IMG/VR virus record: IMGVR_UViG_3300050821_002957
Location: 248,001-312,000 of that record
Direction: 5' to 3' (one strand)
Length of the DNA: 64,000 nucleotides
The position numbers and the translations under genes were made by a program. This document shows, one piece after another, positions 1,294 through 51,097 of this stretch (its first letter is position 1; every line of letters starts with the position of its first letter). The notes beneath the pieces were generated by a model. The model had not been told where the DNA came from and ran no database searches. It saw only the letters and a list, made by a program, of their open reading frames with translations.

Positions 1294-1574
1294 GTATCTA
1301 AGATAGCAAAGATACATCTAAAAGTCAACCACAGAGAGGAACTTTATTCTCTTCCTTTTCAACAACTTGAATCCACTTTCTCAGGTAGTAACGAGCGTCG
1401 TATTTTGTGCTCGTTTCTGCTTGAACAAATGGCGTTGGTTTGCTTTCAAGAATGAGTGGCATCGGCGTGGCTTTCAACATTGCGAGTTTGAAACGAACGT
1501 CGGGCCGTCTATCGAATCGCACGATCATTTCAGGAGCGTATTGAATCGCTGTACCGCCCGGTGTGGATCGTTGT

Positions 1575-2183
1575 TTAAGAATTTCGATTTTGAGCGAGTC
1601 GTTCATTCTGCTCCAGCATGTACATTTCAAAATACACTGACGACGTGACATCGTTCTCCGCACACGCCAATGCGAGTTTGAAAAACTTTTCGTCAGTCTT
1701 CATGTACTCTTGAAGTTCTGTGATTGCTTGTGCTGCACTCTTAAAAAGAATGCCAATGCCGCCAGCTTCACGCCATGCTTTGATGTTCGCTTCAAAGTCG
1801 TCAATGAGGATGTCGCCGGTCTTTGCGTACTGAGCTTTTTCTTTTTTGTGTGCGACGATCTTTACGAGATCCGGTGTCCACATCAACTCTGGAAGTTCAT
1901 TGTCAAGCCAGATGCGTTTGTGCTCATCACTCTTTTCAATGTGCGAAGACGCAGCAGAAAGAATGCCGGGTGTTGCGACTCGGCTGTATCGCACAAAATT
2001 GAACAGTGCTCGTGCGCCATCGACCCACGGAAGATCCCGAAAGAAATATGGATGATCGTTCAACATCGCCCACTTTTCTTCATTGGACCACTTCATATTG
2101 TGATCCCAAGCCTTGCCGGTTCGACGAGTATAATCACCATCAAATTCGCACAACACGCCATCCATATCAAACCAGACTATCAT
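1575..2183 (-). CDS. HAD 5'(3')-deoxyribonucleotidase (NT5C-like)
   Basis: FDMDGVL motif I, FFRDLP, ILSA, DILIDD motif IV, W-x-x-AGG. Confidence 0.88.
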   Translation of the reverse strand: MIVWFDMDGVLCEFDGDYTRRTGKAWDHNMKWSNEEKWAMLNDHPYFFRDLPWVDGARALFNFVRYSRVATPGILSAASSHIEKSDEHKRIWLDNELPELMWTPDLVKIVAHKKEKAQYAKTGDILIDDFEANIKAWREAGGIGILFKSAAQAITELQEYMKTDEKFFKLALACAENDVTSSVYFEMYMLEQNERLAQNRNS

Positions 2184-2378
2184 TTTTTATCCCCTCGGAA
2201 AGAATCTATCGACGACCCACGCCAATAGACCTAAATAAATCGACCACAAACCCCACAAAAATTCCATACGTTTATTATAACCTGGGAATGTGGTTTTGAC
2301 AACTTTGGGGAGTTTTTTTGGGACTTAAGAGGCTGGAACGGAGAGTTTTTGGGAGTTAAGAGAGATAAGAAATTTCAC

Positions 2379-2516
2379 TGGAGGCGGCGTAAGTTTTTGT
2401 TTCGATGTGAATCATTTGCCGCAGATTATCGAATTCTAACTTAATGAATTCTCGCTGACATTCCAACGAATCCAGGCATAGCTGTTGCGGGGTGTTAGTG
2501 TCCACGGCGATCTCCA
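2379..2516 (-). other. Structured non-coding element next to a strand-skewed tract (candidate ncRNA or origin)
   Basis: Intergenic; terminal pairing TGGAG/CTCCA; short motifs shared with the 36.3 kb element. Confidence 0.3.
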
Positions 2517-2915
2517 TTAAAGAAAGTTCTCTTGGATATATATAGCGTCCCGCATAACTGTCTTAATAACTGGTTTGTCTATGGTAAGATGGAGCATGTC
2601 CAAAACCTTTGAAGTTCCAGATAGGCCAAATAGCAAGACACTGAAAAACATCCACAATGACATGCATGATTGGTTCGGTGTCGATTTGACGGACGATCAG
2701 ATTATTCATTATGGCAGGCAGAATCGTCACTTGTGGGCTGACATGCTTAATGGTGAATTTGATACAGTATGTCGAGAACAACTGGCAGATGAAATGGTTC
2801 GAGCAGTTCTCGGCTCTGGTAATGAATGGCCCAGGTATGGCGCTGGCTCACCTGTATTTGAGAAATTTATTGAACGGTTTCGGCCAGCAGCACGAGCGGC
2901 AGGCATCAAAACCGA

Positions 2916-3491: not shown

Positions 3492-3504
3492 GATGTCAGA
3501 TGTT

Positions 3505-5364: not shown

Positions 5365-5733
5365 CTAGTCGTTCCAATCTGGAAGTTCCACAGTTTGTCC
5401 TTTGAGACTGTGGAACGAGTCTGATAGGAATTGAATTTTGCCATCGGTTACATACGAATGGCAACGTTTTGTAGGATCATCACGCCAAACCATAATGCTT
5501 GGTGTGAAGGTCGGCCTGACGATATCGTTATTCCATCCCCAGACAGGCTCTTGGCCTTTCACTCGTACACCGTGCAGGTATTCGCAGCCGGGACAGTGAA
5601 AGGCCATTTGAATGTCATCTGCTTCTTTGCCGTCGATGGCATTGTCGAAGCGATAAATTTTGTCGCCCACTACTGAATGCTCCAACCACAAGAATTTTTT
5701 AATCCTGTTTTGGTAGGAGTATTCTTCGGCCAA
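5365..5733 (-). CDS. DUF6527-like zinc-binding phage protein
   Basis: FHCPGC..HGV, W.WN...RPTFTPSI, RCHSYVTDGKIQFLSD. Confidence 0.65.
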   Translation of the reverse strand: MAEEYSYQNRIKKFLWLEHSVVGDKIYRFDNAIDGKEADDIQMAFHCPGCEYLHGVRVKGQEPVWGWNNDIVRPTFTPSIMVWRDDPTKRCHSYVTDGKIQFLSDSFHSLKGQTVELPDWND

Positions 5734-6075
5734 ATGAAATAACTACCGTCCGGGGAGACGGCGGCTTTCAGATCGTAAAGATCATAATAGTGACCATTGA
5801 ATTCCTTATCACTGGAATAGGTAGTTGCATCAACATATGCCCACCATGTGTGGTTTGCGAACCTGACGTGTTTTAAGACCATCCCCATTGATATCGCTAC
5901 GTGTTCCTCGATGACCTCTATTGGTAGTCCCACTCCAGGTGACATGTTATGTCTCGTTACTGCGTTGCAAAGTTCTATAAACTTATCTTGTGTATGAGTC
6001 AGTTTCATTTTGTTGATGTCCTTGTGTAGCCATTTGCAAGTTCCCGGATTCGTATCCTCTTGTGTTGTAGACATC

Positions 6076-9687: not shown

Positions 9688-10026
9688 TTATCGTTCATGT
9701 TGTGCCTTGATTTCGCTGAGGGGCGTCGGTTTGAACCACAGATCACGCTCGATCTTGAGGCCCAGCGGGAGACGAACGCTTTCGAGTTCGTGAAGATTGA
9801 AATAGCCGAGTTCGTTATCGAAGCCGACGACATAACCAAAAAACAGCCACGTCTTGATTTCCTTGCCGTTTTCGTCTTCGATGACTTCTTCCTGGCCTTC
9901 GGTGGCGTACCAAGTCCAGCTACCGACCGGCGAGAAAAATTTGACGTGAACGGTGGGATTGGGGTTCTTTTCTTGAGAGTACAATTTCGGGAGCCGATTC
10001 TTGATCTCTGCTGTCATCATCTTCAT
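9688..10026 (-). CDS. DUF2958 family protein
   Basis: VKFFSP...WTWYATE...FFGYV.G..ELGYF.L.EL...IERDLWF. Confidence 0.8.
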   Translation of the reverse strand: MKMMTAEIKNRLPKLYSQEKNPNPTVHVKFFSPVGSWTWYATEGQEEVIEDENGKEIKTWLFFGYVVGFDNELGYFNLHELESVRLPLGLKIERDLWFKPTPLSEIKAQHER

Positions 10027-10985
10027 AATCTAATCCTAACAGGTTCGAGGGCGAATGTCAATAGACGTATCTACTTTTTATCACCAATCAGTTCGTCAAT
10101 AATGGCTTCTAGACCGACATGAATAATGGTGAATCCGTCCGCATCATTCATGGTTTTGGGGTAGCTGACATTAAGATCATGGCGGGAATGTTTGAAAATG
10201 TACGTCAACAGTGAGCCGTCCCGTTTGGCGTCCAAATACAGCACTAATCCCATCTCTCCGAAGTGCTTTAAAAACAAGCGCTTGAGATCCTCAGGAAACG
10301 CCAGATCATCGGCCAGCTTTAACTGCTCCAACGTGTAGGCTTTCATACTTCCAATCCTATCAGGTTCAAGGGTTAAAAGTCAACTAGATGTATCAGTTTT
10401 TTCGTACCAATTTGGCGGCATCGGGGTCCAGCTTTTCGTGTCCCGAATGTCGCAAGGCACGTCGGCGTCTTGTGGCCGTAGATGCTTGTGGTATGCGTGT
10501 AGGCGACGTTGAAATTTGGAAGTGCTCAGATAGTCCCCAAGCGTCATCGGTGCGTCTACGTGCGCCGGATTGAGTTCACCGCAGGTTGTACAACGACGCA
10601 GCAGAAAATCGTGATCGCATTCGGTAGTGGCAGACGATGCATTCACAGTAGTGATGTCGTACCGTGTGAATGTTTCATTCGAGTCCCAACAAAGCGTGAG
10701 CGGTTCGATTTCCCTTATTGTTGCGGTGACAAAACGTGTTCCCTTCTCCTTGGACTCGACAAAAATTTTGAAGGATTCTTGCGTCATTAACAGACGTTCA
10801 ATCACATCACGATAGGTCAAATCTTCATCATCTAAAATACGAATTTTCCACTCACCTTCGCCCGGAAGTTCCCATGCGCCAGCAAGACATTCTTTCAATC
10901 CAGGATGAAGCAGTCGTACCCGAAGATTTGGTCGTTCGATTGGATTGAATTTACCGAAGTTAACGATGCTGAATGCCATGACGCT

Positions 10986-11772: not shown

Positions 11773-13308
11773 CTACTTCAGAACGTGGAAAGGATTGTGG
11801 TGTGGTTGTTCGCCGCCCGGTTTCGGATGATTAATGCGAATGATACCGTCAGGATCTACCTTGTTTGCGAATTTACCAGCAGCATCGTTGGTTACGCCTT
11901 TGAGACGAAGACCCGAAACGACTCCGCTGTGTTCATCATGGCCGTGACCGTTGGTGTGCTTGATGCCCAATTGTTGATGACGGTCGAATGTATTATCGTC
12001 TTCGTCACCGTTTGCAATTGGATAACGATGGCCGCTCGATACATCTTCTACGTGTGTCGGATGAGGAGTATCCTTACCACGGTGGTGAACCATTGCGACG
12101 ACGTGACCATTCTTCAATGCATGAACAACGTCTTTATCGTTGCTTTCGGAGTGGCCTGTACCAGTATGAGACAAACTCAAATGGTAATTTTCTGGTTTGT
12201 TCGGATTGTGAAGACGGCCCGGAATTTTGGTATAATCATAAAATTGCGAACCATGATGACGCTCGAAAAATTTCTTCGGCATCAAGTGTTCGTAAGGGAT
12301 GTCAGACGTAACATTTAGACGCACACCGGATTGGTGAGGATTTGGCGTAACTTTGTCGATCTTTCCGCCATGCTCTTTAATGTGGGCTTGTGCTTCTTGT
12401 TTGGTGTTAAACTGGTGTTCGCCAACATGATGAGTCTTTACGTTCGCAGCTTCTTTTTCGTTGCGTGAAATTTCGTGGGACAACAAACGTGCGGCATGTT
12501 CAGGATGCTCATGGACGTAATGTGTACGCAGAACCTTTGCTCGTAATGCTGCTTCAGGATATTGACGATTTCCACCAGCAGTCAGGCCGAGACAATTCTT
12601 GCGGCATTCACCAGACGCCTTCGGGCATAGATCGTGCTTGTATCCAGAGTGTGTGCTTGGAGCCATTGCGAGACCAACTGTCTTTACGCCAGCACCGCTG
12701 CTCTTACGAGTCTTGCCATTTTCACCCATCAAATTTGCTTGACCGTTCTTTGCGTGACCACCACGTTCGTGCATGAATTGACGGAAATGCTTTTGTGCTT
12801 CTTTGGCCTTTTGTTCGGTGACCTTTGGGTGTTCGCCTTCTGGAAATGCAGCATGGAAGCCTGCCTTCATATGCTGGAATGGATTGCCGCCTTGCTTGTC
12901 CAGCGCTTCACGACCCTTTGCCTGAATGTCTTTGACCGGAAATGCATCTTCCGTCATAGAACTTTTCTGCGATTTTCCTGGTTTGCCGGAACGAGTCATG
13001 TTCATCCAGGGCGAAGACAGGTGATGCAAGAAGTTATGAACGATAGGATAGTCGAGGAGAGTCTTCTTGGTGCCTTTCTTTTCGATGAGTATTTGCGGCT
13101 GTTCGTACAGAAATTCGATCTCTGCTTTGTCAAGTTCAAGAGTTTCATCAAGCAGGAGGGCAGCTTGGGTATCGAAAGATTCTACAACTTCTTTGGTTTC
13201 GATCTTTGCTTTGTACTCTTCTGCAAGCTCTTTGTCCATTTTGATGATGTCGGTCAAAAGGTTCTTACCAAAGAACTTGGCGTAATTTTTTTCGGTTAGG
13301 TCGGCCAT
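11773..13308 (-). CDS. GP88-family protein with long N-terminal extension (late)
   Basis: LCPKASGECRKNCL, VRLNVTSDI, FYDYTK, NYHLSLS, NGDEDD, VVSGLRLKG; His-rich; TAAATA upstream. Confidence 0.72.
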   Translation of the reverse strand: MADLTEKNYAKFFGKNLLTDIIKMDKELAEEYKAKIETKEVVESFDTQAALLLDETLELDKAEIEFLYEQPQILIEKKGTKKTLLDYPIVHNFLHHLSSPWMNMTRSGKPGKSQKSSMTEDAFPVKDIQAKGREALDKQGGNPFQHMKAGFHAAFPEGEHPKVTEQKAKEAQKHFRQFMHERGGHAKNGQANLMGENGKTRKSSGAGVKTVGLAMAPSTHSGYKHDLCPKASGECRKNCLGLTAGGNRQYPEAALRAKVLRTHYVHEHPEHAARLLSHEISRNEKEAANVKTHHVGEHQFNTKQEAQAHIKEHGGKIDKVTPNPHQSGVRLNVTSDIPYEHLMPKKFFERHHGSQFYDYTKIPGRLHNPNKPENYHLSLSHTGTGHSESNDKDVVHALKNGHVVAMVHHRGKDTPHPTHVEDVSSGHRYPIANGDEDDNTFDRHQQLGIKHTNGHGHDEHSGVVSGLRLKGVTNDAAGKFANKVDPDGIIRINHPKPGGEQPHHNPFHVLK

Positions 13309-16836: not shown

Positions 16837-19116
16837 GCTTTATCAAGGTATCATGGATCGCCAATCTGTCAAATTTGGGATTGTCAATAGCCTGTGTTGT
16901 ATATAAACTCATGAAACAACGAGGCGTCATCAAGCCGATCATGCAGTCGAAGAAAGAAGAAGTTACAGAGTCGAAGACCACGAGCCTGCCACAACCACCT
17001 TATGCCATTTCGACCATGACCCGGCATTTTTTAGAGAACGAACTTGCATCGAACAAGATCGTCGAAGATGACCTAAACTTCATTTATGATCTGGGAAGAA
17101 GAGTGGCAGGATTTTTGAATCACGAACGACCATTGTTTTACGATCTGGCGGCTGCGGTACAGATGAAATCAGTCGAAGAGGTACGAGATGTTGCAGAAGG
17201 TAGGAAGGAGATTCTGATTGTGCTTCCAGAATTCGGGACTCGCAAGATGCAGACACACGAATTCCGAGTGGCTTTGTGGAAACGAATTGCTGAGGCTATG
17301 TTATAGCCGGTCAAAAACGGACAAACTAAGAAATTGGGGATCATTCATGTACGTCAGTCGTGGACCATAGATTTTTACGTCACCATGAACTGGACAATGG
17401 ATATGAATGTGCTGGCCCGGTGGAATACAAATCATCAGCGGCTTCCTACAAATGCACTTGTTTGGTTTAGGTCGTTGATATTCTTCACCACACTCTGGAC
17501 AGTGATCATTGTCACAATGATGCCGTTTTTGTGGCGTGATCAAATCCCACGGTTCTTCGTTTTTGAATGGTGTTACTCGCCTTCTTTTTTCAATCATAAT
17601 ACCTCGATAAAGTAGTCGTAAAGTTGACTACGTTTTTGATAGTCATGGTCATGGATCGCCGCTACAAGCTCGCCGATCTTTCCAATAAAAATTCGTTTGA
17701 ACGTCTTGTACTTTTTGAAGAAGTCATCGTCCGAAATGTTCATAATGTCGTGGAACAATACCAGGGCATCTTCTGTGTATGTAGCAAAGGCAACTCGTTT
17801 TTCAAACTGAGCATCCTTTCGGAGAGATTCTTGAATTTCTTCGTCTTCAGTGATCATTCGTGTCTTCTCTCCATCACATGTAACGGATTGCATCTTGTAA
17901 CGGCAGGCTCGGACTCTCAGCTATCGTTGCATTGTAGCTCTCTGCATTTTCATCGTACTGATGAAAGATTTCATGCAATCCACCGCCTACGTTCGCTTCT
18001 TCCGTGCCAGCCGGTGCCATTGCAAAGTAGCGTCTTCCTCGTTCGATGCAATAAGGTTTGTCTTCTGGCGAGGGATTGGCAATTAATATAAATTCTGGCA
18101 AATCCATACTGGAGCCGTCCAACATCGCCAAAATGCTGAAGACACACCCTTCCATTCGGTCGCTTTGTGGATCAGGGTGTGTCTTCCAGTAATGAATGAT
18201 CGCCCAAATTTTCTTCATCAAAGCGTGGCGTATTTCGTCCCGAGTGTACTCCCGAGGCTCCAGACGTTCAGTACCCAGTAGTTTTATGGATGGCACGTTC
18301 GAGTTCTCCTATGGCTTCACGTATTGTATCGTACCTATCTGCCGGAAGTGTCATGAGCCGATAATGAACAATTGGACGATGGAGTTCGACCAACAATGCA
18401 TTACCAGCTTTGATCAAATGATCTTTCATCAATCGAAGATTTTCTTCTTCGTCAAACGGCATCATGTTCCTCATTTGCGCTCGTGATTTCAGCATTCACA
18501 TCACGATTGATCTTTTCGACCTGGGTAATTTGTTCTCGCAAAATTCGTTCACGCAGCGTGTTCAGCTTGGCGCACAGTAGGGCCTCTTGACGTTCTTCTG
18601 TCCCTTTGGTCTTCCCACTGAGCGCTCTACCGATGACTTTAAATTCTCTGTCATCGATAGTGAGCATGAAATGCATTTGAACCCGCAAATCCGGCATACA
18701 ACTTATCCGTGAACGAGGAACGCCACGAAAAGATCGCTATTGACGCTATAAAGGGAATGGCAAATCGTGTAGCCTGAAATTGCATCTTCCCCGGCGTTGA
18801 CTTGAGCGTCAATCTGGTGAATTAAGGTTTGTCCGTCAGCCAGCGCAATTCCTACGCTCTCAATACTGACTGGATAGGCTGCTTCATCGCTGCGATAACC
18901 GATGCTTGCAATGAACTGGCCGCAGAAAAACAAAATCGAAAGGCTCTTTGCTGCTACCTTGTTCGTCACTACGTAGTCGGCTACAATTTTCGACAGTTCG
19001 GAAATCGATGCGCCCTGAAAAGACACGAAGTCTTCATGAATCTGATGTTTGACCATTTCTAGTCTCCTTAGGTGCATCTTCGCATATTCCCTAAAAGATG
19101 TCAACTAAATACCGAC

Positions 19117-21125: not shown

Positions 21126-24100
21126 TTCAACTAAATATTTCCACTATGACAGCTTCATTTCTCTCCATTTTGAAATCAGTCGGTAAAGATCTTGGTCACG
21201 TCGGCAGTTGGATTGACGATGGTTTAAAGATCGCACAACCAATCATCGGCGTAATTGATCCTCCGTTGGCACCAATCTTTTTGGCTGTCGAAGCTGCCCT
21301 TGGTGCAATCCCAGCAGGCACCCCGATTACTGCCGACACCGTTCAGAAGTTTGTCACAGCCTCAGCTACCACTCAGGGCGTCAAAAGTATCTGTTGCCCC
21401 GGCGCAGCTTGTCCGACTTGCGGCTGCTAATTATTTCAACGCAGTCATTGCTGCATTGATTTTGGAATTGATAGCGTCGGCTCCACAAGTACAAGAACTA
21501 TAGCCATCTTCTGCACCACACGCCATTTTGTGTGATACATAGGCACCTTCCAGGGCGACCTTTGCTCGAATGAATCAAAACTTTTGAGACCGGCGCTGGC
21601 AACAAACTATCAGCAGTAGGTTTTGTTTCTCTCATTGCCCAGAACTGTGTATCGTAGACACGAGCGAACAGCGGTAACGGCGGTGTTAGATTACGGAGAA
21701 CCACTTCGGTCGGCAGGATGATTTGCTCAAAGCGCATCCGAAGAAAATCCATCGGCGGTGCGGCGTAAATTTCGTAGAGCTTCATTTCTTGATCGCCGCT
21801 TTCTTCTTTTTCATCTTTGTTCCGGCCATGCACAAACCAACTGTGATTCCAAACCAGACGTTCATGATTGCAATCTGGCCCACTGTATAGGTGGTAGCAT
21901 TCAGCATTGGTTCGACCTTATCGTTGATCCGAGAGTCTTCCATTAAATTTAATCGTTCGAGAATGTCTTTTACTATGTCGGCTCCGGTCGGCTGCGCCAT
22001 GTACATGATCTTTGGTCCGAGAAATTCGTAAAGACGTTTGCGGTCTTCGGGCGGCAAAGAGTCGGCTCCGATCAAATCGTAAGCGTCTGCAAATTCTGGC
22101 TTCATGATGAAGTCAAGAACTTTTTTGAAGTATAATTGGCCTTCTTCAGGCGTTCCATCAAACATTGGCATTATGCAGCCTTCTTTCCGAGAATTGCAAT
22201 GATTGCCCACTTCTCAAGTTCTTTTTTCGGCCAACGAGCAGCAGGCCACGGATCACCAAGAGAAACCCATTCCCCGGCGTGCATCACAAAGGCCCAGGTG
22301 TAGCAAATGCCTTTACCATACCAGCGGCGGTCGAAAGAGAATTCCATGTTAGTTCTGTCCTTTCGTCTGGACTCGAACCCAGGCAGTTGCTTTCTCTGTG
22401 CGCCAATAGCAGCCGTAGGCCATGAAGCGAATACGATTTCCTGTCATGCTTGCAAGGCCCTCGATCTTGGCGGCGACCGGCTTGCGTGCGTGATTGTCGA
22501 ACATAATCACATCACCGACCTGAACGTCTGAGGCGGCTTTGTAATCGCTGTTGCTTTCGTTCAGAGGCAGGGTGCTCATTTAGTTGACTCCCAACCAGAG
22601 TAAAAATATATGATACAACCGAACAATCTTATCTTCACGTTCACGACGCCGAATCAGTATTGAACGTCGGTGACCAGCTTCAATGTGAGACTGTGTTATG
22701 CCCATGAATCAATAATAGCAAAACGGACACGCCAAGTCAAGTAGCTACATCTTTTTTCTTCGGGCCTTTTTTGCGGCTCTTTTGTCGGCTCGGATCTTCT
22801 CAACTTCAGCCATTACAGCACGTTCGTAGGCGGCGGCGATGTCAAGCTGAAAGACCTTGCGACGGCCCTTGAGACGAAGCGCCAGCCATGTAGGATGGAT
22901 CGTGACGGCAATTTGACGAGACTTGCTACCTTCTCGAAAAGTGCTGTACGTCAATCGAGTTGTAGGCTTGTTGGCCTTGGTCATTTTATGCGGTCGCTTC
23001 CTTCAGACTTTTTTCGGTCATGTTCATCTGTTGGATCAAATGATTTGTGATGGCGGCTTGATCGGGACCTTCACCAGTGAATTCAAACTGGACGTTCGGC
23101 TGTGAAGCAAAATATACAGAAACCTGATTCACCTTGACACTAGCAAACTTCTCGAATACTTTGAGGATCTTGCGGACCCCGGCTTCTTCATACGGAGCAG
23201 AGAAAACAACGGATTTAAGCATGGGTCCAGCGTAACATGAATCCCAAACTTGTCAATCATTTGGGATGTAGATCGTAAAAACTGGAATTGGACATTGCTT
23301 CATGCGTCTGTCGTATTCTTCACACGGCAATTCTTCTTTGCAGGTCGGACATGCTTGGACGTGCTCACGCATGAACATGTAAAAATCGTCAAGTTCCATT
23401 TTCTCCCTAAACAAACTTTGCGTAGCTGTCACACGATCTATCAATGTGCCACTTTAGAGCCTCAAGAACGGCAGCATCTTCAGAAGAAACTTCATTCGGA
23501 TCACCACCGGCATAGATGACATCGTGCTCTACGGCAATGTTGCGGTCGTACTTCATCAAAATTGTAAGACCGGCGATCACTCTCTCGATGGTGCTCATGT
23601 TTTCCAATTTTTCCATGTGTCTAGTCCTTTTTAAAAAATGAGTGCGAACGACGGACACCACTCTACCGTCCGCACCCTCGCATGTTACTGCGATGTCTTT
23701 GTAGTCATCACAATGATTTCCATTGCATCACTCATTGTGAAGGTGCCGGGAAGAAGCACGCCATTACTGATGATACGCCATGCCTGAAGACCTTCGTCGA
23801 AGACAATGTTATCGGGCAGGCGTTGATTGGAGCGACCAACAAAATCAAACATCATCGGTAACGTCCTGTCTTGCGGAGCCATTCGTCACGTTCTGCTTTG
23901 CGTTGGCGCTGAAGAACCGTAGTCGCCATCGGAGCGCAGCGACAGACAGCGAATGCCATGAGTGCGATGATGAACCACGCAGCCAAATGACCCCAGTGGG
24001 AATTGTACGCTGAGAGAATAATGGCAATGAAAGATACAAATACTACGGCAAGTGATCCGTAGTTGATGATGGTCAGAAACCAGAAATAAAAATCCTGGTC

Positions 24101-24198: not shown

Positions 24199-25104
24199 TT
24201 ACGCTTCGACTTCGACTTCGTAGACAGCGAGGAACAGTTCGTTCAGTTCGTCGCTGTCGATGACTCCCGCACGATAATCCTTCAGGCCGAACAGGAACTT
24301 CTGAGCAGGACCCGCAGGCGTATTCTCGATGGTCTCGTCGATCCACTTCTTCACGTCGGCGTCGGTGCGCTTGATCGGCCCGGACACAGCAGCGCCAATT
24401 GCAGAAGCAGCCTTGGCGATACCTGAAGCGGTTGCACGACCATTCGGAGAATCGGCCTTCGCTTTGGCAATGACGGCCTTACGATCCTTGGTGGCGATCT
24501 TGGCGACAGTGTGAACAGCATCGAACTTCATGCCACCAGTAGCGAGTTCTTTCTGCGAATCCACGTCGAGTTCGAGTACCTTGCGACGGTTGCTGATGAA
24601 AGACGCAGGCTTGCCGAGTTTCTTGGCAATTTGAGCATCGGTCAGTCCGCACGGCTCGACCACCTGGAGGAACAGAACGTAATCGGTGTCGGTCAGATCC
24701 TTGCGAGTGGCGTTTTCGATGAAGCTGGCGAAGAGCGCTTCGGCTTCGTTCATCGGCTGGAACATCGCATCGAGCAAAAACGGATTGTCGGGACCGTAGG
24801 CAATCTCGGTCTCTGTGCCGGTTGCCAGATCCAGACGCCATCCCTTCAGCTTCTTCTTGTTGATGATGTCGGCGGCGAGAATACGAGTGTGGCCGGTGAC
24901 AGGGACGGCCTTCTCACCATCGCCACGACGCACGGTAATGGGCACCTTCTGTCCACCAGCGAGAAGACTCTGAACCATGTCTTCAATCTGTTCGTCGGTG
25001 CGAGTGACACGTCCGGTGTACTTGGCGAAGTTCTTCTTTAGATCGGCGGGTAAGAAGCGGGGAGCGTCCTTCTTTCCGTAAGTTTCGGTTGAGAATTTGA
25101 TCAT
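24199..25104 (-). CDS. ParB-like protein with HTH
   Basis: GQKVPITV, VTGHTR..A, IEN..RKDL, AQIAKKLGKPASFIS. Confidence 0.75.
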   Translation of the reverse strand: MIKFSTETYGKKDAPRFLPADLKKNFAKYTGRVTRTDEQIEDMVQSLLAGGQKVPITVRRGDGEKAVPVTGHTRILAADIINKKKLKGWRLDLATGTETEIAYGPDNPFLLDAMFQPMNEAEALFASFIENATRKDLTDTDYVLFLQVVEPCGLTDAQIAKKLGKPASFISNRRKVLELDVDSQKELATGGMKFDAVHTVAKIATKDRKAVIAKAKADSPNGRATASGIAKAASAIGAAVSGPIKRTDADVKKWIDETIENTPAGPAQKFLFGLKDYRAGVIDSDELNELFLAVYEVEVEA

Positions 25105-26007
25105 TTGTTTCGGTGTCCTTTTTTGTTTCGTTTTTACTACTCTGACTTTTCTACTCTAAACTAGGTGCATCTACTTTGTCAATAGCAAACGCAAAATTAT
25201 TTCACTAATTCCAACCAGCCCCATTGATTGTTGTCAGTCCACATGGTTTCCCATTCGTAGTCAATGGTGGCATCGAGCAGCACTTCGATACGTTGTGCGT
25301 CATGACCACCGTATTTCTTTGACGGCCCAGGCATTTCTACGACGGTTCCGATGCGGCCTTCGTTCATCGAATTGCCGCAAATCAGCACACGATCACCAAC
25401 TTTCACGATGGCCGGTGCAGGTACGGGCTTCGGTGTCGGGTTTGATTCTAGTCTTGCCAAAACCTCGTTGACAAAATCAATTTCCTGCCGATCACGTTCA
25501 GCCAGAACAGTCGGATCAATCAAGGCACGTTCGGCTTCATAAGCGGCCTTTGTAATGGCACACTTATCCAAAAATTCCCGGTGACAAGGCTTGCAGACAC
25601 ATTTGCGGACATGAGGACCAAAAGGCTTTTCCTCACTGAATGCACCAACATATTCGCCCTCCAGGTAATTCTCGTATTGGCTAGTGTTGATCATGAAACC
25701 ATCTTACCAGATAGATGTATCTAATGTCAACGAGTCACGGCAACTTTTTTTCAAGACGTTTCATCTCGATCAGTTGATGAAACAAGTCGGTACAGGTTTT
25801 CAACTGATCGAAAAATCGAGGATCGGCTGGCTTTTCTTCGGGATGGAGTGAAACCATTGTCGAAAGCAGCCCATTACAGGCTTCAATTTTGCGTTCCAAC
25901 AAAGTGATAGGACTGGGTTTCACAAATACCGGAGCCGGGGGAGGAACGCTCCGTGAAGGAACGTTCCCCAAAGTCGTCAAGAGAAGGATGGCGACTATCA
26001 TATCGTT

Positions 26008-32771: not shown

Positions 32772-33032
32772 ATGGCTACCAGTAAAGATAACACTTTTGT
32801 CTGTAGTTTCTGCGATCCCCCAAGAAAATGTGTCAACGCTCAAGGTCTCGCAGCCCATCAACGGTCGGCACACCCAGATCAAGTCAAATCAAAATCAACA
32901 CCTAAAAAGACGCATCACAAAACATATCACAAAAAATCATCAGAGATCTCATTGGCCGATGCGATCAATGCGTTGGAAATCAAACGAGACGCTTTGGATG
33001 AAGTCATTAAAAATTTGAAGGAGATGTTATGA
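32772..33032 (+). CDS. C2H2 zinc-finger protein
   Basis: CSFC...GLAAHQRSAH; own TTGACT-17-TATACT promoter. Confidence 0.65.
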   Translation: MATSKDNTFVCSFCDPPRKCVNAQGLAAHQRSAHPDQVKSKSTPKKTHHKTYHKKSSEISLADAINALEIKRDALDEVIKNLKEML

Positions 33033-33331
33033 AACCATTGAGCAGGCGACAAGTCAGTACACTACGCCATTTAAAGATTCATGGAAGCGTCAGCATAGAG
33101 AGCTTGCGGTCCTTCCACCAGGGAACAATCTGGAGCCTTATGTACAAAGGACTCGTAGTCAAATTTGGAGGATCAGATGTAGGATTATCTACGGCAGGCG
33201 AGGCAGTCCTTCGTGACTACAATTCGACGGCCCCGAGCTATCGCAAACATGATGCCGAATTGACCGACCGAGTTCAACGTCTTCTCGTGCGAGTGAAAAT
33301 TCTTCAGATGCGAAAATCTGCGGCAGCTTGA
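33029..33331 (+). CDS. Possible winged-helix DNA-binding protein
   Basis: LS.RQ..TL..L....TIWSL..KGLV...LS.AG pattern. Confidence 0.4.
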   Translation: MKPLSRRQVSTLRHLKIHGSVSIESLRSFHQGTIWSLMYKGLVVKFGGSDVGLSTAGEAVLRDYNSTAPSYRKHDAELTDRVQRLLVRVKILQMRKSAAA

Positions 33332-33363
33332 CATTTAGATGCATCTAGTGCTATGCTGGGTGC
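33328..33363 (+). promoter_or_regulatory. Sigma70-type promoter with perfect palindrome TAGATGCATCTA in the spacer; leaderless start
   Basis: TTGACA-18-TATGCT, ATG 6 nt later; palindrome at 33336..33347. Confidence 0.8.
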
Positions 33364-34913: not shown

Positions 34914-35452
34914 CGTATATTTAGTCCTTTAATATGAACATCCAGAGATTGTGATTTTGTTTTTCCTGTCGATCTCTTGACCATCGTTGAACCAGCTTAC
35001 CGACCAATCCGTAGACCACCAGGACAAAGCCGATGATCATTACGTTATTGATGCCGTACTGATTCAAAGCAAACATCACTTAGCCGATCCAATCATTTTT
35101 TGTGCTCCCAGTGAATCACTACGGTTGCGTACATTCCACCGCCATCGTGCGACTCCCGAACACCATATCCAAGCGGTGTCAGCATTGAAGCTACTTTTGC
35201 GACAAATTTTGATGCCGGGTAATAATCAACCCGAAACGAAGCAGCGCCGCTCGACGTGTACTTGACCGGATTGTCAATCATGTCCTCGATCTTTGGTGCA
35301 ACGACATTATTGATAAAATTGGTGACCTCGGTCTCAACTTCCTCAGCGTGCTTAATCTCGGCGGCGGCGACGTATTCAGCAGCAGTTTTGATGGTCAATC
35401 CGTTGTTCATGAATAAAGAATAGCATGAAGATGTATCTAATGTCAAGGCCCC

Positions 35453-40612: not shown

Positions 40613-41710
40613 TTATTTCACCCCTGCAAATTGTTCGATCATTGCTTGCTGGGAAGGCTGACCGGCCAGCGGATTCGCCGACGAAGGCTTCACACCCTTT
40701 ACCAGCCGCACATTGTGGAACGTCGTCGGATACTGATTGAAGCCTTTTCCGTGGACACTGTAGTTGCAGATCACTTTGTTGCGAACAGTGAAGCTCGATC
40801 CATCGGCGAAGTGAAACACAATCTCGCCCTGAAAGCCTGCGCCATTCACATGACCCTCGATGATTTCGGGAATGACACCGGAACCGAAACCGCTCATGAT
40901 CATCTGATTGTCTTTCGCTTCAAGAACGACGGCCAGCTTGGTGACGTTTTTGTAGAGGAACATACGCTGGGCATAATCGGCGTCCTTCTGAGCGATCTTG
41001 CGGAGCAGATCCTTGAAATTTGGAACGAGGCGAGTATAGTTGCCGGTGTGCGAATCCCATCCTTCGCCTACAGTCTGTAACAAGAAATCGGCAGAGGTCG
41101 GCGTATATCGTTCGTTGCGTGTGCGAGGATGGTCCATGCGATATTGAACCGAAGAGACGAAATTGTTGAACAGGATGTCTTCGTACTGGAGGGTCAGACC
41201 GTCTGTCATGTCCTTCAGAACTTTCGTGACGAGGATTGCCGCTTCGGTGGTCGGCATCGGCGGAACGTAATCGTCGGCCTTCTCTTCTTCGCTGCGCCCG
41301 ACACGCTTCACAATTTTGTCCTTCAGGAGCATCAGCGCATCATACAGGTCAACGATCTCAGCGCAGACGGCGAACCATTGAGCATTGTCAAACTTCTTCT
41401 TTTTGGCGAGCTTCACTTTTCCGGCGACTTGATTGCCGTACATGAAAGTCAGATCGAAGGTATAGTTCTCGACCTTGGGAAAATGATAGGCAGCGCTAAA
41501 GGCTTCGCTGTACAGTCCACGATGGCTGTCCTCTGCGATACTGACGACGGTATTGAGTGCTTCTTTGGCGCTCTTGAATTCAGGATTGGGGATCGAATCG
41601 GTGTAGGTGTTCAGAGCATTGACGACCGTCTGGAGGGCTTTCTTGCCCCAAGACGATTGATTCGCTTGGCAGGCGGCGTTCAACAGCGGGTATTGATCTA
41701 CGCTCTTCAT
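40613..41710 (-). CDS. Early hypothetical phage protein
   Basis: 365-aa ORF with its own leaderless promoter and palindrome; no function recognised. Confidence 0.6.
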   Translation of the reverse strand: MKSVDQYPLLNAACQANQSSWGKKALQTVVNALNTYTDSIPNPEFKSAKEALNTVVSIAEDSHRGLYSEAFSAAYHFPKVENYTFDLTFMYGNQVAGKVKLAKKKKFDNAQWFAVCAEIVDLYDALMLLKDKIVKRVGRSEEEKADDYVPPMPTTEAAILVTKVLKDMTDGLTLQYEDILFNNFVSSVQYRMDHPRTRNERYTPTSADFLLQTVGEGWDSHTGNYTRLVPNFKDLLRKIAQKDADYAQRMFLYKNVTKLAVVLEAKDNQMIMSGFGSGVIPEIIEGHVNGAGFQGEIVFHFADGSSFTVRNKVICNYSVHGKGFNQYPTTFHNVRLVKGVKPSSANPLAGQPSQQAMIEQFAGVK

Positions 41711-41876
41711 GAAACTAGAATAGCAAACCTACCCTACCATGTCAACAGTAGATGCATCTTTTTCTGGAAGGAATATTTTATCTACCTCTTGACATATTGA
41801 CGGCTGGTGCGCTATGCTGGTACTGTCAAAGAGAGTCCCATTTTCAACGACTTACGTCCGTTGATAAATACTCTCC

Positions 41877-48296: not shown

Positions 48297-48381
48297 ACAT
48301 ACTCAGAAGTAGTTATACTAGCGGCGAATCATTAGTGGAGGCCCAATAATCCGCCGCCAGTTTTACAGAATCAACCAAAAA

Positions 48382-50175
48382 CTACTCTTCGGTCTCTTCT
48401 GCGATCCCAGCACTTGAACCACGAATAAAATCCGTAACCAATGCTGGAACATTCGAGTCGAACCCAACGATGTCCAAAGAATACGGGTCCTTCGGATCTG
48501 CGATGGTAAATTGCGTAGAAACCATTCCCATCACGATCAGGCGCACATCATCCTGCCCACGATGCTTACGATACTGCTTGAGAGCCTGCGACGGTTGCAT
48601 TTGTCCAGCCCAAGTCTCATTATCCGTGATCACCATGAAAGCGTCTGCGTCGATGCCAGCCTTTTGAGCGTGAAGCATCGGTGCAGCACAATCGGTTCCA
48701 CCAGCCGACATGCGAGAGGTCTTTGCCAACGCAGTCTTCAGAGTGTCCTTTGCGGTGATGCCAATTTCCTGCATTCCCGTAGAAAATGCATAGATAGCGT
48801 AATTCGGTTCCGTGCGAGCCACAACCATCGCCATTGCTGCGCCTGCTTGTGCTGCCGTGATTCCGGTGCCTTGGATGATGCTGGACGCCCACGACATAGA
48901 ACCAGAAACGTCCATGCCAATGTACGTAGCCTTACCAGTCGGAATTGCGTTTGCGAATGCCAAGTAGAACGTGTTCTCTAAAGCGTCCACAATGGTCGGT
49001 ACAACGGTCCAGGTCGCATCGCTGCGCTGACCGTGGCCTTGGCCGTAGGTGCCTTGTGCCAACAATACCTGGAGCGGGTGAATCTTGCTCTTCTTGACGT
49101 AGGCTTCATCGTTCAAACGAGACACGACGAGCTTCGATGCTGCCGACAGCGGCTTCAAGAGACCAATCTTCGACATGGTTCCAAGATTACGAACCATTGC
49201 AGTTACCGGCATCTTCTGAAGCAGAGCTTCCCAGACTTCCGGTTGCGTCTTAAACTGCGTCGGAATCATTTCGTGAGTCAATCCACCGTCGATGATGCAC
49301 TTTACGATAGTGCTCGTATCCGTCGCCTTCTTTGCGGTTTCATAGGCGGTGATCAACTTCGGTGCGTTCGATCCGGTCAACAAATCATAAGCGTTCTGAT
49401 AGCGAGCACGCTGATTCTGAATTTCCGCAGAAGTCAGATCAGTCGTGCGATGGCTGTTGCCCTGCCACTTCTTGACAGAACGAGTCCAGTTCTGAGCAGC
49501 TTCGTTCAAGGCATCGAGACCACCGAAACGACCCCAAGCCAGCAAAGCACTCTTCATCGGATCAGTCGCCTTGACGTGTGCGAGGCTGACGAGATCACGA
49601 GTGGACCAGCCATCACGCTGTTGATACTTCGCCAACTGATAAGCCAGCGAATCTTCCGTGCGTTCGGTGTACCAGTTGCCGATTGCAGTCTTTACACCAC
49701 GACCGTATCCACGCATGGAATCGAGGTACTCGTTGAAGTGGAACATGTGAGTACCGATACGTGCAACCTTGCTCAATTGCGACAGAGCATAAGCAGCAGT
49801 TTCAGCCGAACCAAAATTCGGTGTTGCGGCAACTGCCAGGGCAAACAATGCCGGATCGTTCTTCGGAGCACGGCCTGCTTGCGAAATGTTGACGATCATA
49901 TCGACCGTGCGCTTTCCATCCAACTGCAAGCACGCACGAACGTTCGCTGCGTTGTCTACAGTCATCTTCTTGGCAGATGCATAGTACGTCGGCGCATCGC
50001 TACCGAGAATCAAAAATCGTTCGAGCATCTGGAAGGGAGTGATGGTGAAGGTGTATCCACCAGCGTTGTTCTGCTTCATCTCTGCTTCCCGGCCCGGAAT
50101 TGCCTGCGACTGTGATGTCTTCTTGCCGCTTAATACCGTTGCGTAATTGCTCTTTGCTGATCCTGCCTTTGCCAT
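48382..50175 (-). CDS. rsr: Ro60/Rsr TROVE-domain RNA-binding protein
   Basis: NNAGGY, RFLILGS, GRAPKNDPALFALA, KYQQRDGWS, RNLG.M, IHP, vWA DVSGSM, TDNETW, GFD; AGGAGA SD before ATG 50175. Confidence 0.95.
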   Translation of the reverse strand: MAKAGSAKSNYATVLSGKKTSQSQAIPGREAEMKQNNAGGYTFTITPFQMLERFLILGSDAPTYYASAKKMTVDNAANVRACLQLDGKRTVDMIVNISQAGRAPKNDPALFALAVAATPNFGSAETAAYALSQLSKVARIGTHMFHFNEYLDSMRGYGRGVKTAIGNWYTERTEDSLAYQLAKYQQRDGWSTRDLVSLAHVKATDPMKSALLAWGRFGGLDALNEAAQNWTRSVKKWQGNSHRTTDLTSAEIQNQRARYQNAYDLLTGSNAPKLITAYETAKKATDTSTIVKCIIDGGLTHEMIPTQFKTQPEVWEALLQKMPVTAMVRNLGTMSKIGLLKPLSAASKLVVSRLNDEAYVKKSKIHPLQVLLAQGTYGQGHGQRSDATWTVVPTIVDALENTFYLAFANAIPTGKATYIGMDVSGSMSWASSIIQGTGITAAQAGAAMAMVVARTEPNYAIYAFSTGMQEIGITAKDTLKTALAKTSRMSAGGTDCAAPMLHAQKAGIDADAFMVITDNETWAGQMQPSQALKQYRKHRGQDDVRLIVMGMVSTQFTIADPKDPYSLDIVGFDSNVPALVTDFIRGSSAGIAEETEE

Positions 50176-50250
50176 ATCATTATCTCCTATGATACCTAAT
50201 TTTTTCGACTTCACCAGAATAACACATGCCTGATTGTTGTCAAGCATGTA

Positions 50251-50589
50251 TTATCCAATATCACCTGCTCCATCTTTGTGACGTAAGATCACTTCTTCAG
50301 CGATCATGTACGCCAAGACTGCAAGCTGTTCGTAATACTTCATGGTCATATCGATGATTTCGTCGATCTGACTACGTGTTGCGATGATACGAACCGGAAT
50401 CATTCGTTCCTCAAACAGCGTCTCTTTAAAAATCCACTGTCCTTTCGCAACCGGCATGATCGTCAAACCACCAGAAATTGTACGCACCTTTTCATCCCAG
50501 ATTTTGTGGAATCTGGTTCTGATCGGACGACCGTCATTCCGCATTGTCGGAACGAGAATCTCCCACATCGATTTTTTGGTGCTATTCAC
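50251..50589 (-). CDS. Hypothetical phage protein upstream of rsr
   Basis: WEILVPT..GGLTI...KGQW..ERMIPVRI; leaderless promoter with palindrome. Confidence 0.6.
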   Translation of the reverse strand: MNSTKKSMWEILVPTMRNDGRPIRTRFHKIWDEKVRTISGGLTIMPVAKGQWIFKETLFEERMIPVRIIATRSQIDEIIDMTMKYYEQLAVLAYMIAEEVILRHKDGAGDIG

Positions 50590-51097
50590 ACACCCACCAT
50601 AACATGTAGATGTGTCTTTGTCAAACTACCAATTCAAATTGTTCGAGGTCCCCGGTCACATAGCTGCCCGTTTCAAGTTGAGCCGTCCAGTGATCAGGAT
50701 GAAGTACGTATGATTCGGAAGTTGGATTCCAAATTTTATACCGCTCAGTTACCACGCCTGCGATTATATAGGCACACTGAAAATTACAGCCAGGACAACG
50801 TTCGGTTTTGGTTCCATCCCAGCCGCCATGATAGAGGATCTTGACGCCGGGTTTCATTTGGTCGAGGATCATGAAATACTCACACTATCGGCTAACACCA
50901 TCAATTCTCATGAGTTTGCCTCTTAATGTCCGGTGCTATCAGTTCTATGAGCTTGTCCAGTTGAGGCCGAATGGTGTCTAGGTCAACTTTCGTGTAACCC
51001 TTTTGCATCATTGCGTCTACCATTTCATATGCCGTAGTTGTGATCTCGTACAATTCTTCTGTCAGATCGCTTTGGTAGACGTACTCGCCCCAATCTC

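What the first reader, a model, noticed from the sequence alone, without database searches (positions are those of the whole stretch)
1309..50618. Regulon marked by the 12-bp palindrome TAGATGCATCTA
Matches occur at 1309, 10062, 10385, 19069, 25162, 25712, 33336, 35428, 41749 and 50607. Each lies in the spacer of, next to the -35 of, or over the -10 of a TTGAC(A/T) promoter. This implies a dimeric regulator of a subset of early genes, including the ParB-like, DUF2958 and SWIM genes. Candidate regulators in the window are the wHTH-like 33029..33331, directly upstream of the perfect copy, and the AbrB-like 62446..62748.
Basis: partly seen in the sequence, partly recalled or inferred. Interest (0 to 1): 0.62.

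Follow-up and report, generated by a model that had tools for sequence, protein, structure and literature searches.

The report
Operator palindrome at phage early promoters
A 12-base palindrome sits at fixed positions in about 55 host-type promoters of a 405-kb soil jumbo phage, so one phage-encoded DNA-binding dimer probably controls most early genes; this kind of control is known, but the protein, the site and the setting are new.

Summary
TAGATRYATCTA occurs 17 times exactly in the 405,631-bp phage genome, against none in simulated genomes. Of the 37 copies with at most one mismatch, 31 lie inside TTGACW-N17/18-TGnTAnnnT promoters (p about 1e-45).

The palindrome takes three positions:
- abutting the -35 (centre -41.5);
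- filling the spacer (centre about -23);
- over the -10 and start site.

These promoters start transcription at the ATG, so the mRNAs are leaderless. Related soil phages at 50-80% protein identity keep the whole architecture. Bacterial genomes do not, including 121 Acidobacteriota, which argues for a phage-encoded regulator.

ORF 33029-33331 is missing from a close relative that keeps the operator. The AbrB-like gene has no operator nearby.

The best candidate lies outside the window. It is a 120-aa ribbon-helix-helix protein (genome 5637-5999), found in every relative whose known sequence covers its region, and it is predicted to form the classic dimer. The ParB/KorB-like gene at 24199-25104 is the main rival.

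Binding is untested. Whether the -41.5 sites activate or repress is also unresolved.

The parts
1300..1328 (-). Promoter TTGACT-17-TATCTT with operator AAGATACATCTA (1309-1320) in the spacer (centre -21.5). It drives a leaderless 255-aa gene, 526-1293.
10033..10073 (-). Promoter TTGACA-17-TAGGAT with operator TAGACGTATCTA (10062-10073) abutting the -35 (centre -41.5). It drives the leaderless DUF2958 gene, 9688-10026.
10354..10396 (-). Promoter TTGACT-18-TAGGAT with operator TAGATGTATCAG (10385-10396) 1 bp upstream of the -35 (centre -43.5). It drives a leaderless 91-aa gene, 10071-10346.
19069..19104 (-). TTGACA (19099-19104)-17-GAAGAT with operator TAGGTGCATCTT (19069-19080) over the -10 and start site. 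The gene has a Shine-Dalgarno site and starts at 19056 (18703-19056). A late-type CTAAATA promoter (19105-19111) points the other way, to the gp53-like gene.
   Evidence: read directly from the sequence
22712..22753 (-). Promoter TTGACT-17-TATTAT with degenerate operator TAGCTACATCTT (22742-22753; centre -42.5). It precedes a leaderless 41-aa ORF, 22580-22705.
25153..25182 (-). Promoter TTGACA-18-TAGAGT with operator TAGGTGCATCTA (25162-25173) in the spacer (centre -21.5). It lies upstream of the ParB/KorB-like gene and its roughly 40-nt leader.
24199..25104 (-). ParB/Noc/KorB-like HTH protein (301 aa). It is a regulated gene and the main rival candidate for the regulator.
25701..25730 (-). 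Promoter TTGACA-18-TAAGAT with operator TAGATGTATCTA (25712-25723) in the spacer (centre -23.5). It drives a leaderless 165-aa gene, 25197-25694.
33328..33357 (+). Promoter TTGACA-18-TATGCT with the perfect operator TAGATGCATCTA (33336-33347; centre -22.5). It drives a leaderless 62-aa gene, 33364-33552. Promoter and gene are conserved in relative L243 (86% identity).
35417..35446 (-). Promoter TTGACA-18-TATTCT with operator AAGATGTATCTA (35428-35439) in the spacer (centre -23.5). It drives a leaderless 105-aa gene, 35093-35410, followed by the CCA-adding enzyme gene.
41717..41760 (-). Promoter TTGACA-17-TATTCT with operator TAGATGCATCTT (41749-41760) 3 bp upstream of the -35 (centre -44.5). 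It drives a leaderless 365-aa gene, 40613-41710.
50596..50624 (-). Promoter TTGACA-17-TATGGT with operator TAGATGTGTCTT (50607-50618) in the spacer (centre -23.5). It drives a leaderless (GTG) 112-aa gene, 50251-50589, followed by the Ro60/TROVE gene.
33029..33331 (+). No family or structure match, and absent from the close relative L243. Unlikely to be the regulator.
32772..33032 (+). 86-aa protein with a C2H2-like zinc-finger string, a basic stretch and a C-terminal helix. It is leaderless, from a promoter without the palindrome. In L243 it lies next to the conserved perfect-operator promoter. A minor candidate.
62446..62748 (-). AbrB/MazE-like protein (100 aa), conserved as a pair with the 80-aa ORF 62204-62446. 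In this genome both lie downstream of the TyrRS gene and its promoter, which has no palindrome.

Best explanation
TAGATRYATCTA is the operator of a phage-encoded, sequence-specific DNA-binding dimer, or dimer of dimers. It is built into about 55 sigma70-type promoters (TTGACW-N17/18-TGnTAnnnT) of a T4-like 405-kb soil phage. These promoters put the ATG 6 nt after the -10, so transcription should start at the start codon and the mRNAs are leaderless.

Taking +1 as the A of the ATG, the operator occupies one of three places:
- Class A: -47..-36, directly abutting the -35 (centre -41.5; about 34 promoters including shifted ones). A short A-tract lies upstream.
- Class B: about -29..-18, filling a spacer that is mostly 18 bp (about 14 promoters; the commonest class in this window).
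- Class C: -11..+1, over the -10 and start site (about 4 promoters).

A protein bound at class B or C sites must exclude RNA polymerase, which means repression. At class A it would touch sigma region 4 or the alpha C-terminal domain. That could repress, as KorB does at its -35-adjacent operators, or activate, as a class II factor or lambda cI at PRM does. I lean slightly to repression, because class A promoters already have perfect -35 and extended -10 elements and five promoters carry both an upstream and a core operator.

The most likely regulator, at about 40%, is the 120-aa ribbon-helix-helix protein at genome 5637-5999, outside the window. It is made from a conserved operon whose promoter has no palindrome.

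Shown: the site statistics, the positions, the conservation in relatives and the absence from bacterial genomes. Inferred: binding, the regulator's identity, the sign of regulation, the timing and the start sites.
For: Enrichment and position:
- Sites are far more frequent than chance and sit at promoters.
- The 12 bp are dyad-symmetric. The flanks are not conserved except for promoter elements and the A-tract.
- The same module appears at three different promoter positions, and five promoters carry two copies. So it is a separable binding site, not just an extended promoter.

Leaderless layout:
- 41 of 163 promoter matches have a start codon (ATG or GTG) exactly 6 nt after the -10 that opens an ORF of at least 40 aa. 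About 1% is expected.

Conservation:
- Palindrome + TTGACW + N17/18 + TAnnnT + N6 + ATG is kept in syntenic relatives at 50-80% protein identity, while the spacer sequences differ.

Not a host system, as far as tested:
- 93 genome hits to the 17-mer, against about 139 expected by chance, and none with the promoter layout.
- 121 Acidobacteriota genomes hold 11 copies in total, fewer than a control word.

The ribbon-helix-helix (RHH) candidate:
- It has the hallmark sequence KILLRLPSTL...NRSEFIRRAVRF, and K10, L12 and R14 are invariant in 38 homologues.
- 20 of 38 homologues match Pfam RHH_1 at E <= 0.01.
- JGI names members CopG/Arc/MetJ family regulators.
- The predicted homodimer scores 0.63, with the best of 3 controls at 0.00. 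The three runs agree in at least 91% of contacts, and the partner pLDDT is at least 77. In the tool's calibration, 20 of 30 true pairs and 1 of 23 single chains reached this mark, though those counts hold only roughly with my own alignment. The model shows strand 10-14 pairing antiparallel with its twin, plus helix B packing on helix B.
- It is present wherever its region is covered: G002, G005, G008, L238, and the 370-kb and 374-kb contigs.
Against: - No binding or expression data exist. The RNA contigs in two soil metatranscriptomes are too sparse to show start sites or timing.
- The RHH family is so conserved, and so confined to this clade, that protein and operator cannot be tested for co-variation.
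- Its Pfam score is below the curated cut-off (16.6 against 20.5 bits).
- Fold searches found only the C-terminal helical hairpin.
- The RHH gene's own promoter has no convincing operator, which is unusual for this family. The conserved TATATACCTCTA there is better explained as a -10 plus an anti-Shine-Dalgarno stem.
- Only a handful of DNA-binding families were searched in the roughly 700 genes, so an unrecognised regulator is possible.
- The host is unknown. A host factor from a lineage not among the reference genomes cannot be excluded.
Confidence: 0.7

Rival explanations
1. The regulator is the ParB/Noc/KorB-like HTH protein encoded at window 24199-25104. It would act like KorB of IncP plasmids, as a global repressor that binds a compact palindrome placed next to or inside many promoters, including its own.
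For: - It is the only protein in the genome that matches HTH_ParB (26.6 bits, above the cut-off), and it gives the genome's only, sub-threshold, HTH_3 match. It also has a weak ParB N-terminal domain match and PDB matches to Noc, Spo0J and ParB.
- Its own promoter carries the operator in the spacer in G000 and L246, and two adjacent copies lie upstream of the gene in L243.
- Homologues at 51-75% identity sit in relatives that carry the same palindromes.
- From general knowledge, ParB-family proteins read 13-16 bp palindromes, and KorB class I operators lie just upstream of the -35.
Against: - It is missing from the syntenic position in G003, where other genes sit behind a class B promoter.
- It was not found in 285 kb of a related phage assembled as contigs G001 and G008, which carry about 19 operators. 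A region of that genome is unassembled, however.
- No homologue is recorded on the 374,748-bp relative, which does have the operators.
- Only 8 clusters occur in the clade, against 62 for the RHH protein. It looks like an accessory gene in a variable region.
Confidence: 0.15
2. One of the reader's two candidates, or the neighbouring zinc-finger-like protein, is the regulator: ORF 33029-33331 (wHTH-like), ORF 62446-62748 (AbrB-like) or ORF 32772-33032.
For: - The AbrB/MazE domain is real (25.2 bits, above the cut-off; PDB AbrB-family matches) and is conserved in G008 together with its 80-aa partner.
- ORF 33029-33331 ends inside the -35 of the perfect-operator promoter.
- The 86-aa C2H2-like protein abuts that promoter in L243.
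Against: - ORF 33029-33331 has no family or structure match and is absent from L243, which keeps the operator.
- The AbrB-like gene has no operator within about 2 kb, looks like a two-gene module, and was not found on the 370-kb or 374-kb contigs. That search also missed the known G008 copy, so the absence is weak evidence.
- The zinc-finger assignment rests on a 0.90 look-alike score, which is only a lead.
Confidence: 0.1
3. No dedicated phage repressor or activator is involved. The palindrome is read by a host protein or by RNA polymerase itself, as an extended early-promoter element in the way T4 early promoters carry extra conserved upstream positions.
For: - Most copies abut the -35 at a fixed distance and are preceded by an A-tract like an UP element.
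- The host is unknown, so its regulators cannot be checked.
Against: - The same 12 bp also occurs in the spacer and over the -10. No polymerase subunit is known to read a dyad there.
- Dyad symmetry implies a dimer.
- There is no enrichment in about 185,000 reference genomes for the composite, or in 121 Acidobacteriota for the box.
- A third of the same promoter type lacks the palindrome.
Confidence: 0.07

Closest known systems
KorA/KorB operators of IncP plasmid RK2 (from general knowledge, not tested here)
   Same: Short 12-13 bp palindromes are repeated at many promoters of one replicon, in defined positions: just upstream of the -35, or over the -10. This forms a global regulon. A ParB-family gene is present here and is itself under an operator.
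   Different: - This is a roughly 400-kb T4-like phage, not a plasmid.
- There are about 55 sites rather than about 7-12.
- A spacer class exists.
- The ParB-like gene is not conserved across relatives that keep the operators.
- The sequence is unrelated.
P22 Arc and Mnt ribbon-helix-helix repressors (from general knowledge)
   Same: A small RHH protein, with a C-terminal oligomerisation helix as in Mnt, acts on an operator between the -35 and -10 of a phage promoter. The Arc operator contains symmetric TAGA boxes, as this palindrome does.
   Different: - Arc and Mnt each control one or two promoters from a 21-bp or 17-bp operator and regulate themselves.
- Here a 12-bp site is spread over about 55 promoters.
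- There is no clear self-regulation.
- The TAGA resemblance is recalled, not tested.
Dispersed operators of temperate phages: P1 C1 operators, phiC31 conserved inverted repeats, mycobacteriophage L5 stoperators (from general knowledge)
   Same: Many copies of one repressor site are scattered across a phage genome at or near early promoters.
   Different: Those phages are temperate and the repressor maintains lysogeny. This genome shows no lysogeny module in what I examined, has T4-like late-type promoters, and places the sites at strict positions.
Dual regulators that activate from about -42 and repress from core sites: lambda cI at OR, phi29 p4 (from general knowledge)
   Same: One dimer-binding site type is centred at -41.5 in some promoters and inside the core promoter in others. 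That could switch expression between gene sets.
   Different: Class A promoters here already have consensus -35 and extended -10 elements, unlike PRM or A3. Activation is not shown.

Membership tests
Dispersed operator regulon of a mobile element (RK2 kor, P1 C1, phiC31 CIR type) | Many near-identical sites, far above chance | tested here: met
   17 exact and 20 one-mismatch copies, against 0 and 1.75 in Markov simulations. In the window, 10 hits against 2.3 expected.
Dispersed operator regulon of a mobile element (RK2 kor, P1 C1, phiC31 CIR type) | Sites placed at defined positions relative to the -35 and -10 | tested here: met
   31 of 37 sites lie in promoter zones covering 2.24% of the genome, p = 1.6e-45. 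Centres cluster at -41.5, about -23 and about -5.5.
Dispersed operator regulon of a mobile element (RK2 kor, P1 C1, phiC31 CIR type) | Sites conserved in related elements while the surrounding DNA diverges | tested here: met
   The same layout is found in G001-G005, G008, L238, L243, L246, L247 and L248.
Dispersed operator regulon of a mobile element (RK2 kor, P1 C1, phiC31 CIR type) | An element-encoded protein binds the site and changes transcription | not testable with these tools
   No protein-DNA modelling or assay is available. The RNA data were too sparse.
Ribbon-helix-helix (CopG/Arc/MetJ) regulator, for genome ORF 5637-5999 | Profile match to RHH families | tested here: inconclusive
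   RHH_1 scores 16.6 bits, below the 20.5 cut-off. 20 of 38 homologues match at E <= 0.01, best 1.8e-4. No PDB sequence match.
Ribbon-helix-helix (CopG/Arc/MetJ) regulator, for genome ORF 5637-5999 | Intertwined dimer with an antiparallel two-stranded ribbon and two helices per chain | tested here: met
   The monomer model has an extended stretch at 9-16 and helices at 17-30 and 36-49. The dimer model scores 0.63 against 0.00 for controls, with 12:12, 14:10 and 43:43 contacts. This is a prediction only.
Ribbon-helix-helix (CopG/Arc/MetJ) regulator, for genome ORF 5637-5999 | Binds this palindrome | not testable with these tools
   Only co-occurrence is available: the protein is present in every relative whose known sequence covers its region.
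ParB/KorB family regulator, for window ORF 24199-25104 | ParB-type HTH domain | tested here: met
   HTH_ParB 26.6 bits, above the 22.6 cut-off. The KorB domain scores 18.6 bits, below its cut-off. PDB matches to Noc and Spo0J at E about 3e-6.
ParB/KorB family regulator, for window ORF 24199-25104 | Present in every genome that carries the operators | tested here: not met
   Absent at the syntenic locus of G003. None recorded on the 374,748-bp contig, which has operators. Not found in G001 or G008. These records are incomplete, so this is not final.
Class II activator site (CRP/FNR/lambda cI type) | Site centred near -41.5, overlapping or abutting the -35 | tested here: met
   24 sites are centred at -41.5 (21 at promoters with an exact TTGAC), if +1 is the A of the ATG. 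The start site is inferred, not mapped.
Class II activator site (CRP/FNR/lambda cI type) | Core promoter too weak to work without help | tested here: not met
   Class A promoters have exact TTGAC(A/T), a 17-bp spacer and a TGn extended -10.
MerR-type spacer operator | Overlong 19-20 bp spacer and a MerR-family protein | tested here: not met
   The spacers are 17-18 bp. No MerR_1 or HTH_17 match in the genome.
T4 MotA/AsiA middle-promoter system | MotA and AsiA genes, with a MotA box replacing the -35 | tested here: not met
   No AsiA match, and MotA_activ scores only 14 bits. The -35 is intact.

The most novel reading that the evidence does not exclude
One small ribbon-helix-helix protein, made from an unregulated immediate-early operon, works as a timing switch for a T4-like jumbo phage that lacks MotA and AsiA. 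It would shut off promoters that carry the operator in the spacer or over the -10. It would boost, or hold polymerase at, promoters that carry the operator at -41.5. Both the early and the late promoter types of this phage appear to make leaderless mRNAs, which points to a host with efficient leaderless translation and a phage gene-expression programme built around it.
Probability: 0.2. Interest if true: 0.7.

Novelty: new variant of a known kind. Interest (0 to 1): 0.55.

Why it matters
- Gene regulation in uncultivated huge phages is almost unknown. This clade offers a cis-regulatory code that can be read from sequence alone. It sorts about 55 transcription units of mostly unknown small genes, plus Ku, ParB-like, DUF2958, DUF7007, HD and YodL-like genes, into one co-regulated set.
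- It gives a short list of proteins to test.
- The systematic leaderless layout of both promoter types is a usable clue to the unknown soil host. It is also a warning for gene callers, which miss such starts.
- If the -41.5 sites activate, this would be a middle-gene switch different from the T4 MotA/AsiA model.

Tried and rejected
- INPHARED phage search with 8 kb of the window: no match.
- ParB-like protein as a single query against viral contigs: nothing.
- Distant relative G006 (360 kb): no palindromes, only chance-level leaderless promoters and 42 shared proteins, so it is useless for testing co-variation.
- RHH alignment against viral and metagenome contigs: only close relatives at 65-100% identity (71-100% in the metagenome scan), so co-variation of protein and operator could not be tested.
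- Metatranscriptome contigs: three pieces of 161-219 nt, with no start-site or timing information.
- Foldseek and VIA searches with the RHH model: only the generic C-terminal helical hairpin matched.
- RHH self-regulation through the conserved TATATACCTCTA: rejected in favour of a -10 plus an anti-Shine-Dalgarno stem.
- A weak HTH_27 hit at window 17122-17229 was not confirmed by Pfam on the ORF.
- Host inference from the leaderless-promoter pattern in five genomes: no signal.
- The records behind L243, L246 and L247 are not held, so they could not be searched whole.
- 26 of the 42 stretches hit in the viral-contig pattern scan come from an unrelated protein-coding gene family at about 35% GC. 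They share the 18-mer inside a coding sequence and are not promoters.

Full report
WHAT THE WINDOW IS. The window is bases 248,001-312,000 of a single 405,631-bp virus record. The record is IMG/VR, linear, with a CheckV completeness of 100%. It comes from soil metagenomes and has 46% G+C. It encodes T4-type baseplate proteins, a Gp23-like capsid neighbourhood in relatives, Ro60/TROVE, a CCA-adding enzyme and TyrRS. It has no match among deposited phage genomes.

THE OBSERVATION. The exact palindrome TAGATGCATCTA occurs once in the window, at 33336. Ten sites have up to 2 mismatches, against 2.3 expected and at most 5 in 100 shuffles. Sites 10385 and 50607 have 3 mismatches to the strict form, but only 2 once the centre is allowed to be R-Y. 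Sites 5822 and 31788 have no promoter nearby and look like chance.

Genome-wide, TAGATRYATCTA has 17 exact, 20 one-mismatch and 65 two-mismatch copies. Second-order Markov simulations give 0, 1.75 and 33. Of the 37 best copies, 31 lie inside promoter zones that make up 2.24% of the genome (p = 1.6e-45).

ANATOMY. The promoters are TTGAC(A/T), a 17 or 18 bp spacer that ends in TGn (an extended -10), then TAnnnT. In 41 of 163 pattern matches a start codon (ATG or GTG) lies exactly 6 nt after the -10 and opens an ORF of at least 40 aa, against about 1% expected. The usual start position is 7 nt after the -10, which is the A of the ATG. These transcripts should therefore be leaderless.

With that numbering the palindrome takes three positions:
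- Class A: -47..-36, abutting the -35, centre -41.5 (24 sites). About 10 more are shifted by 1-4 bp. An A-tract precedes them.
- Class B: about -29..-18, filling the spacer, which is 18 bp in most cases (about 14 sites).
- Class C: -11..+1, where a TAAGAT -10 doubles as the left half-site (about 4 sites).

In the window:
- Class B: 1309, 25162, 25712, 33336, 35428 and 50607.
- Class C: 19069.

Five promoters elsewhere in the genome carry two copies. About a third of the same promoter type has no palindrome, so it marks a subset. Outside the 12 bp only promoter elements and the A-tract are conserved.

CONSERVATION. A pattern scan of viral contigs, followed by protein comparisons, found syntenic relatives at 50-80% protein identity. 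They keep palindrome, TTGACW, N17/18, TAnnnT, N6 and ATG, while their spacer sequences differ. More relatives reached through protein look-ups show the same. One of these is a 374,748-bp contig in which the palindrome mostly sits 1 bp further from the -35.

A much more distant 360-kb relative has neither the palindrome nor the leaderless promoters. In one genome for each of about 185,000 prokaryote species, the composite 17-mer occurs 93 times, about the chance level of roughly 139, and never with the promoter layout. In 121 Acidobacteriota genomes the box is rarer than a control word. The system therefore belongs to this phage clade.

WHO BINDS IT. Searches of the whole genome gave the following:
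- No HTH_17, MerR, sigma region 4, MotA or AsiA.
- One ParB/Noc/KorB-like HTH protein, at window 24199-25104.
- One AbrB/MazE-like protein, at window 62446-62748.
- One ribbon-helix-helix-like (RHH-like) protein, at genome 5637-5999.

It is absent from relative L243, which keeps the gene on each side and the operator-bearing promoter.

The ParB-like gene is attractive. Its family reads compact palindromes, and its own promoter carries the operator in G000 and L246, with two copies upstream of the gene in L243. Against it:
- It is replaced by other genes at the syntenic spot in G003.
- It was not found in 285 kb of a related phage (contigs G001 and G008).
- It is not recorded on the 374-kb contig, which does have operators.
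- It forms only 8 clusters in the clade.

The RHH protein forms 62 clusters at 57-100% identity. It is present in every relative whose known sequence covers its region, including both near-complete contigs. Further evidence for it:
- It carries the family's hallmark sequence, with K10, L12 and R14 invariant.
- 20 of 38 members match RHH_1.
- Its model shows an extended stretch, two helices, then a C-terminal helical hairpin.
- It is predicted to form the classic intertwined dimer. The score is 0.63 and the best of 3 controls is 0.00. The runs agree in at least 91% of contacts and the partner pLDDT is at least 77. In the tool's calibration, 20 of 30 true pairs and 1 of 23 single chains reached this mark, roughly, since my own alignment was used.
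- It sits in a conserved operon (NADAR ... HD, M24 peptidase, RHH) behind a conserved promoter that has no palindrome. That fits a regulator made first.

None of this shows binding. I put the RHH protein at about 40%, the ParB-like protein at 15%, the other named proteins at 10% together, a host factor or polymerase element at 7%, and an unrecognised phage protein for the rest.

MECHANISM. A protein on class B or C sites must block polymerase. For class A, the centre at -41.5 and the upstream A-tract are what a class II activator site looks like. Against activation, these promoters already have perfect -35 and extended -10 elements, several also carry a core operator, and offsets of 1-4 bp occur. 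I therefore lean slightly to repression, as KorB does from -35-adjacent operators. The sign is open.

'Early' is inferred from the sigma70-like form. A second, T4-late-like motif, CTAAATA, is concentrated in intergenic DNA before other genes, including the baseplate gp53-like gene.

COMPARISON AND NOVELTY. The logic is known: one operator repeated at many promoters of a mobile element, as in RK2 KorA/KorB, P1 C1, the phiC31 inverted repeats, and Arc or Mnt in a promoter spacer. What is new:
- the site and the probable protein;
- the scale, about 55 sites;
- the three strict positions;
- the setting, a T4-like huge soil phage without MotA or AsiA;
- the coupling to leaderless starts.

The 12-mer appears in the literature only inside primers. 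I rate it a new variant of a known kind, with moderate interest.

LIMITS.
- My gene calls are home-made.
- Start sites are inferred.
- The host is unknown.
- Relatives are mostly fragments.
- Absence from protein look-ups is weak for short proteins. The AbrB-like search missed a known copy.

Noticed in passing
Whole genome. In the window, for example 33328-33366, 25694-25730 and 10026-10061.: The sigma70-like promoters place a start codon exactly 6 nt after the -10 in 41 of 163 pattern matches, against about 1% expected. The first gene of each unit should therefore be translated from a leaderless mRNA. Standard gene callers may misplace these starts.
   Followed up: yes
Window 6465, 19105-19111, 35845; genome 8011, 20843, 60050, 166758, 385128, 396606 and others.: A second upstream motif, (A/T)CTAAATA(C/G/T). 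46 of its 79 copies lie in the roughly 15% of the genome that is intergenic. It is mostly followed by 5-6 nt and then ATG. It looks like a T4-type late promoter, and it too is leaderless. It precedes the gp53-like baseplate gene.
   Followed up: partly
Genome 5520-5640, outside the window; orthologues in L107, L108, L230, L238.: The leader of the RHH gene keeps CCTCT just after a TGnTATATAC -10. This can pair with the AGAGG Shine-Dalgarno site, which suggests a translational control hairpin.
   Followed up: partly
Window 28176-28916; genome 6027-6662, 73324-73911, 102238-102780, 324790-325452.: Five paralogous GIY-YIG/NUMOD3 homing endonuclease genes. Copies in relatives sit at different places; in G008, for example, one lies where this genome has the TyrRS gene.
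   Followed up: partly
Window 48382-50247, 33663-34913, 62724-63872.: A Ro60/TROVE-vWA protein, a CCA-adding enzyme and a tyrosyl-tRNA synthetase are encoded in the window. This is an RNA repair and translation toolkit typical of huge phages.
   Followed up: no
Genome 60665-61585, outside the window.: A Ku homologue is driven by a class B promoter. Other operator-linked genes (DUF2958, DUF7007, YodL-like, ParB-like) resemble the gene sets of plasmid leading regions.
   Followed up: no
Genome ends (1-1460 and 404,000-405,631); G008 63,500-64,000.: The contig ends fall in paralogous, promoter-bearing small genes. In relative G008 the homologues of both ends are adjacent. The genome is therefore probably circularly permuted, or was cut arbitrarily during assembly.
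   Followed up: partly
L244/L245 (a 94-kb contig binned as Bryobacteraceae).: The nearest ParB/KorB-like homologue outside the clade (41% identity) lies on a phage-like element with Mu Gam, methylases and a DUF3987 primase. That element is binned in an Acidobacteriota metagenome-assembled genome and has no palindromes. It is a very weak hint to the host.
   Followed up: partly
L248 (the 374,748-bp relative), e.g. 13111-13160 and 14544-14590.: In this relative the operator sits 1 bp further from the -35. The spacer often begins TCTA, so TTGACATCTA contains an extra half-site (CATCTA) overlapping the -35.
   Followed up: no
Viral loci L001, L003-L006, L008 and others (about 35% GC).: An unrelated family of viral contigs shares the 18-mer TAGATACATCTATTGACT inside a conserved protein-coding sequence. 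Exact-pattern scans can pull in such non-regulatory look-alikes.
   Followed up: yes
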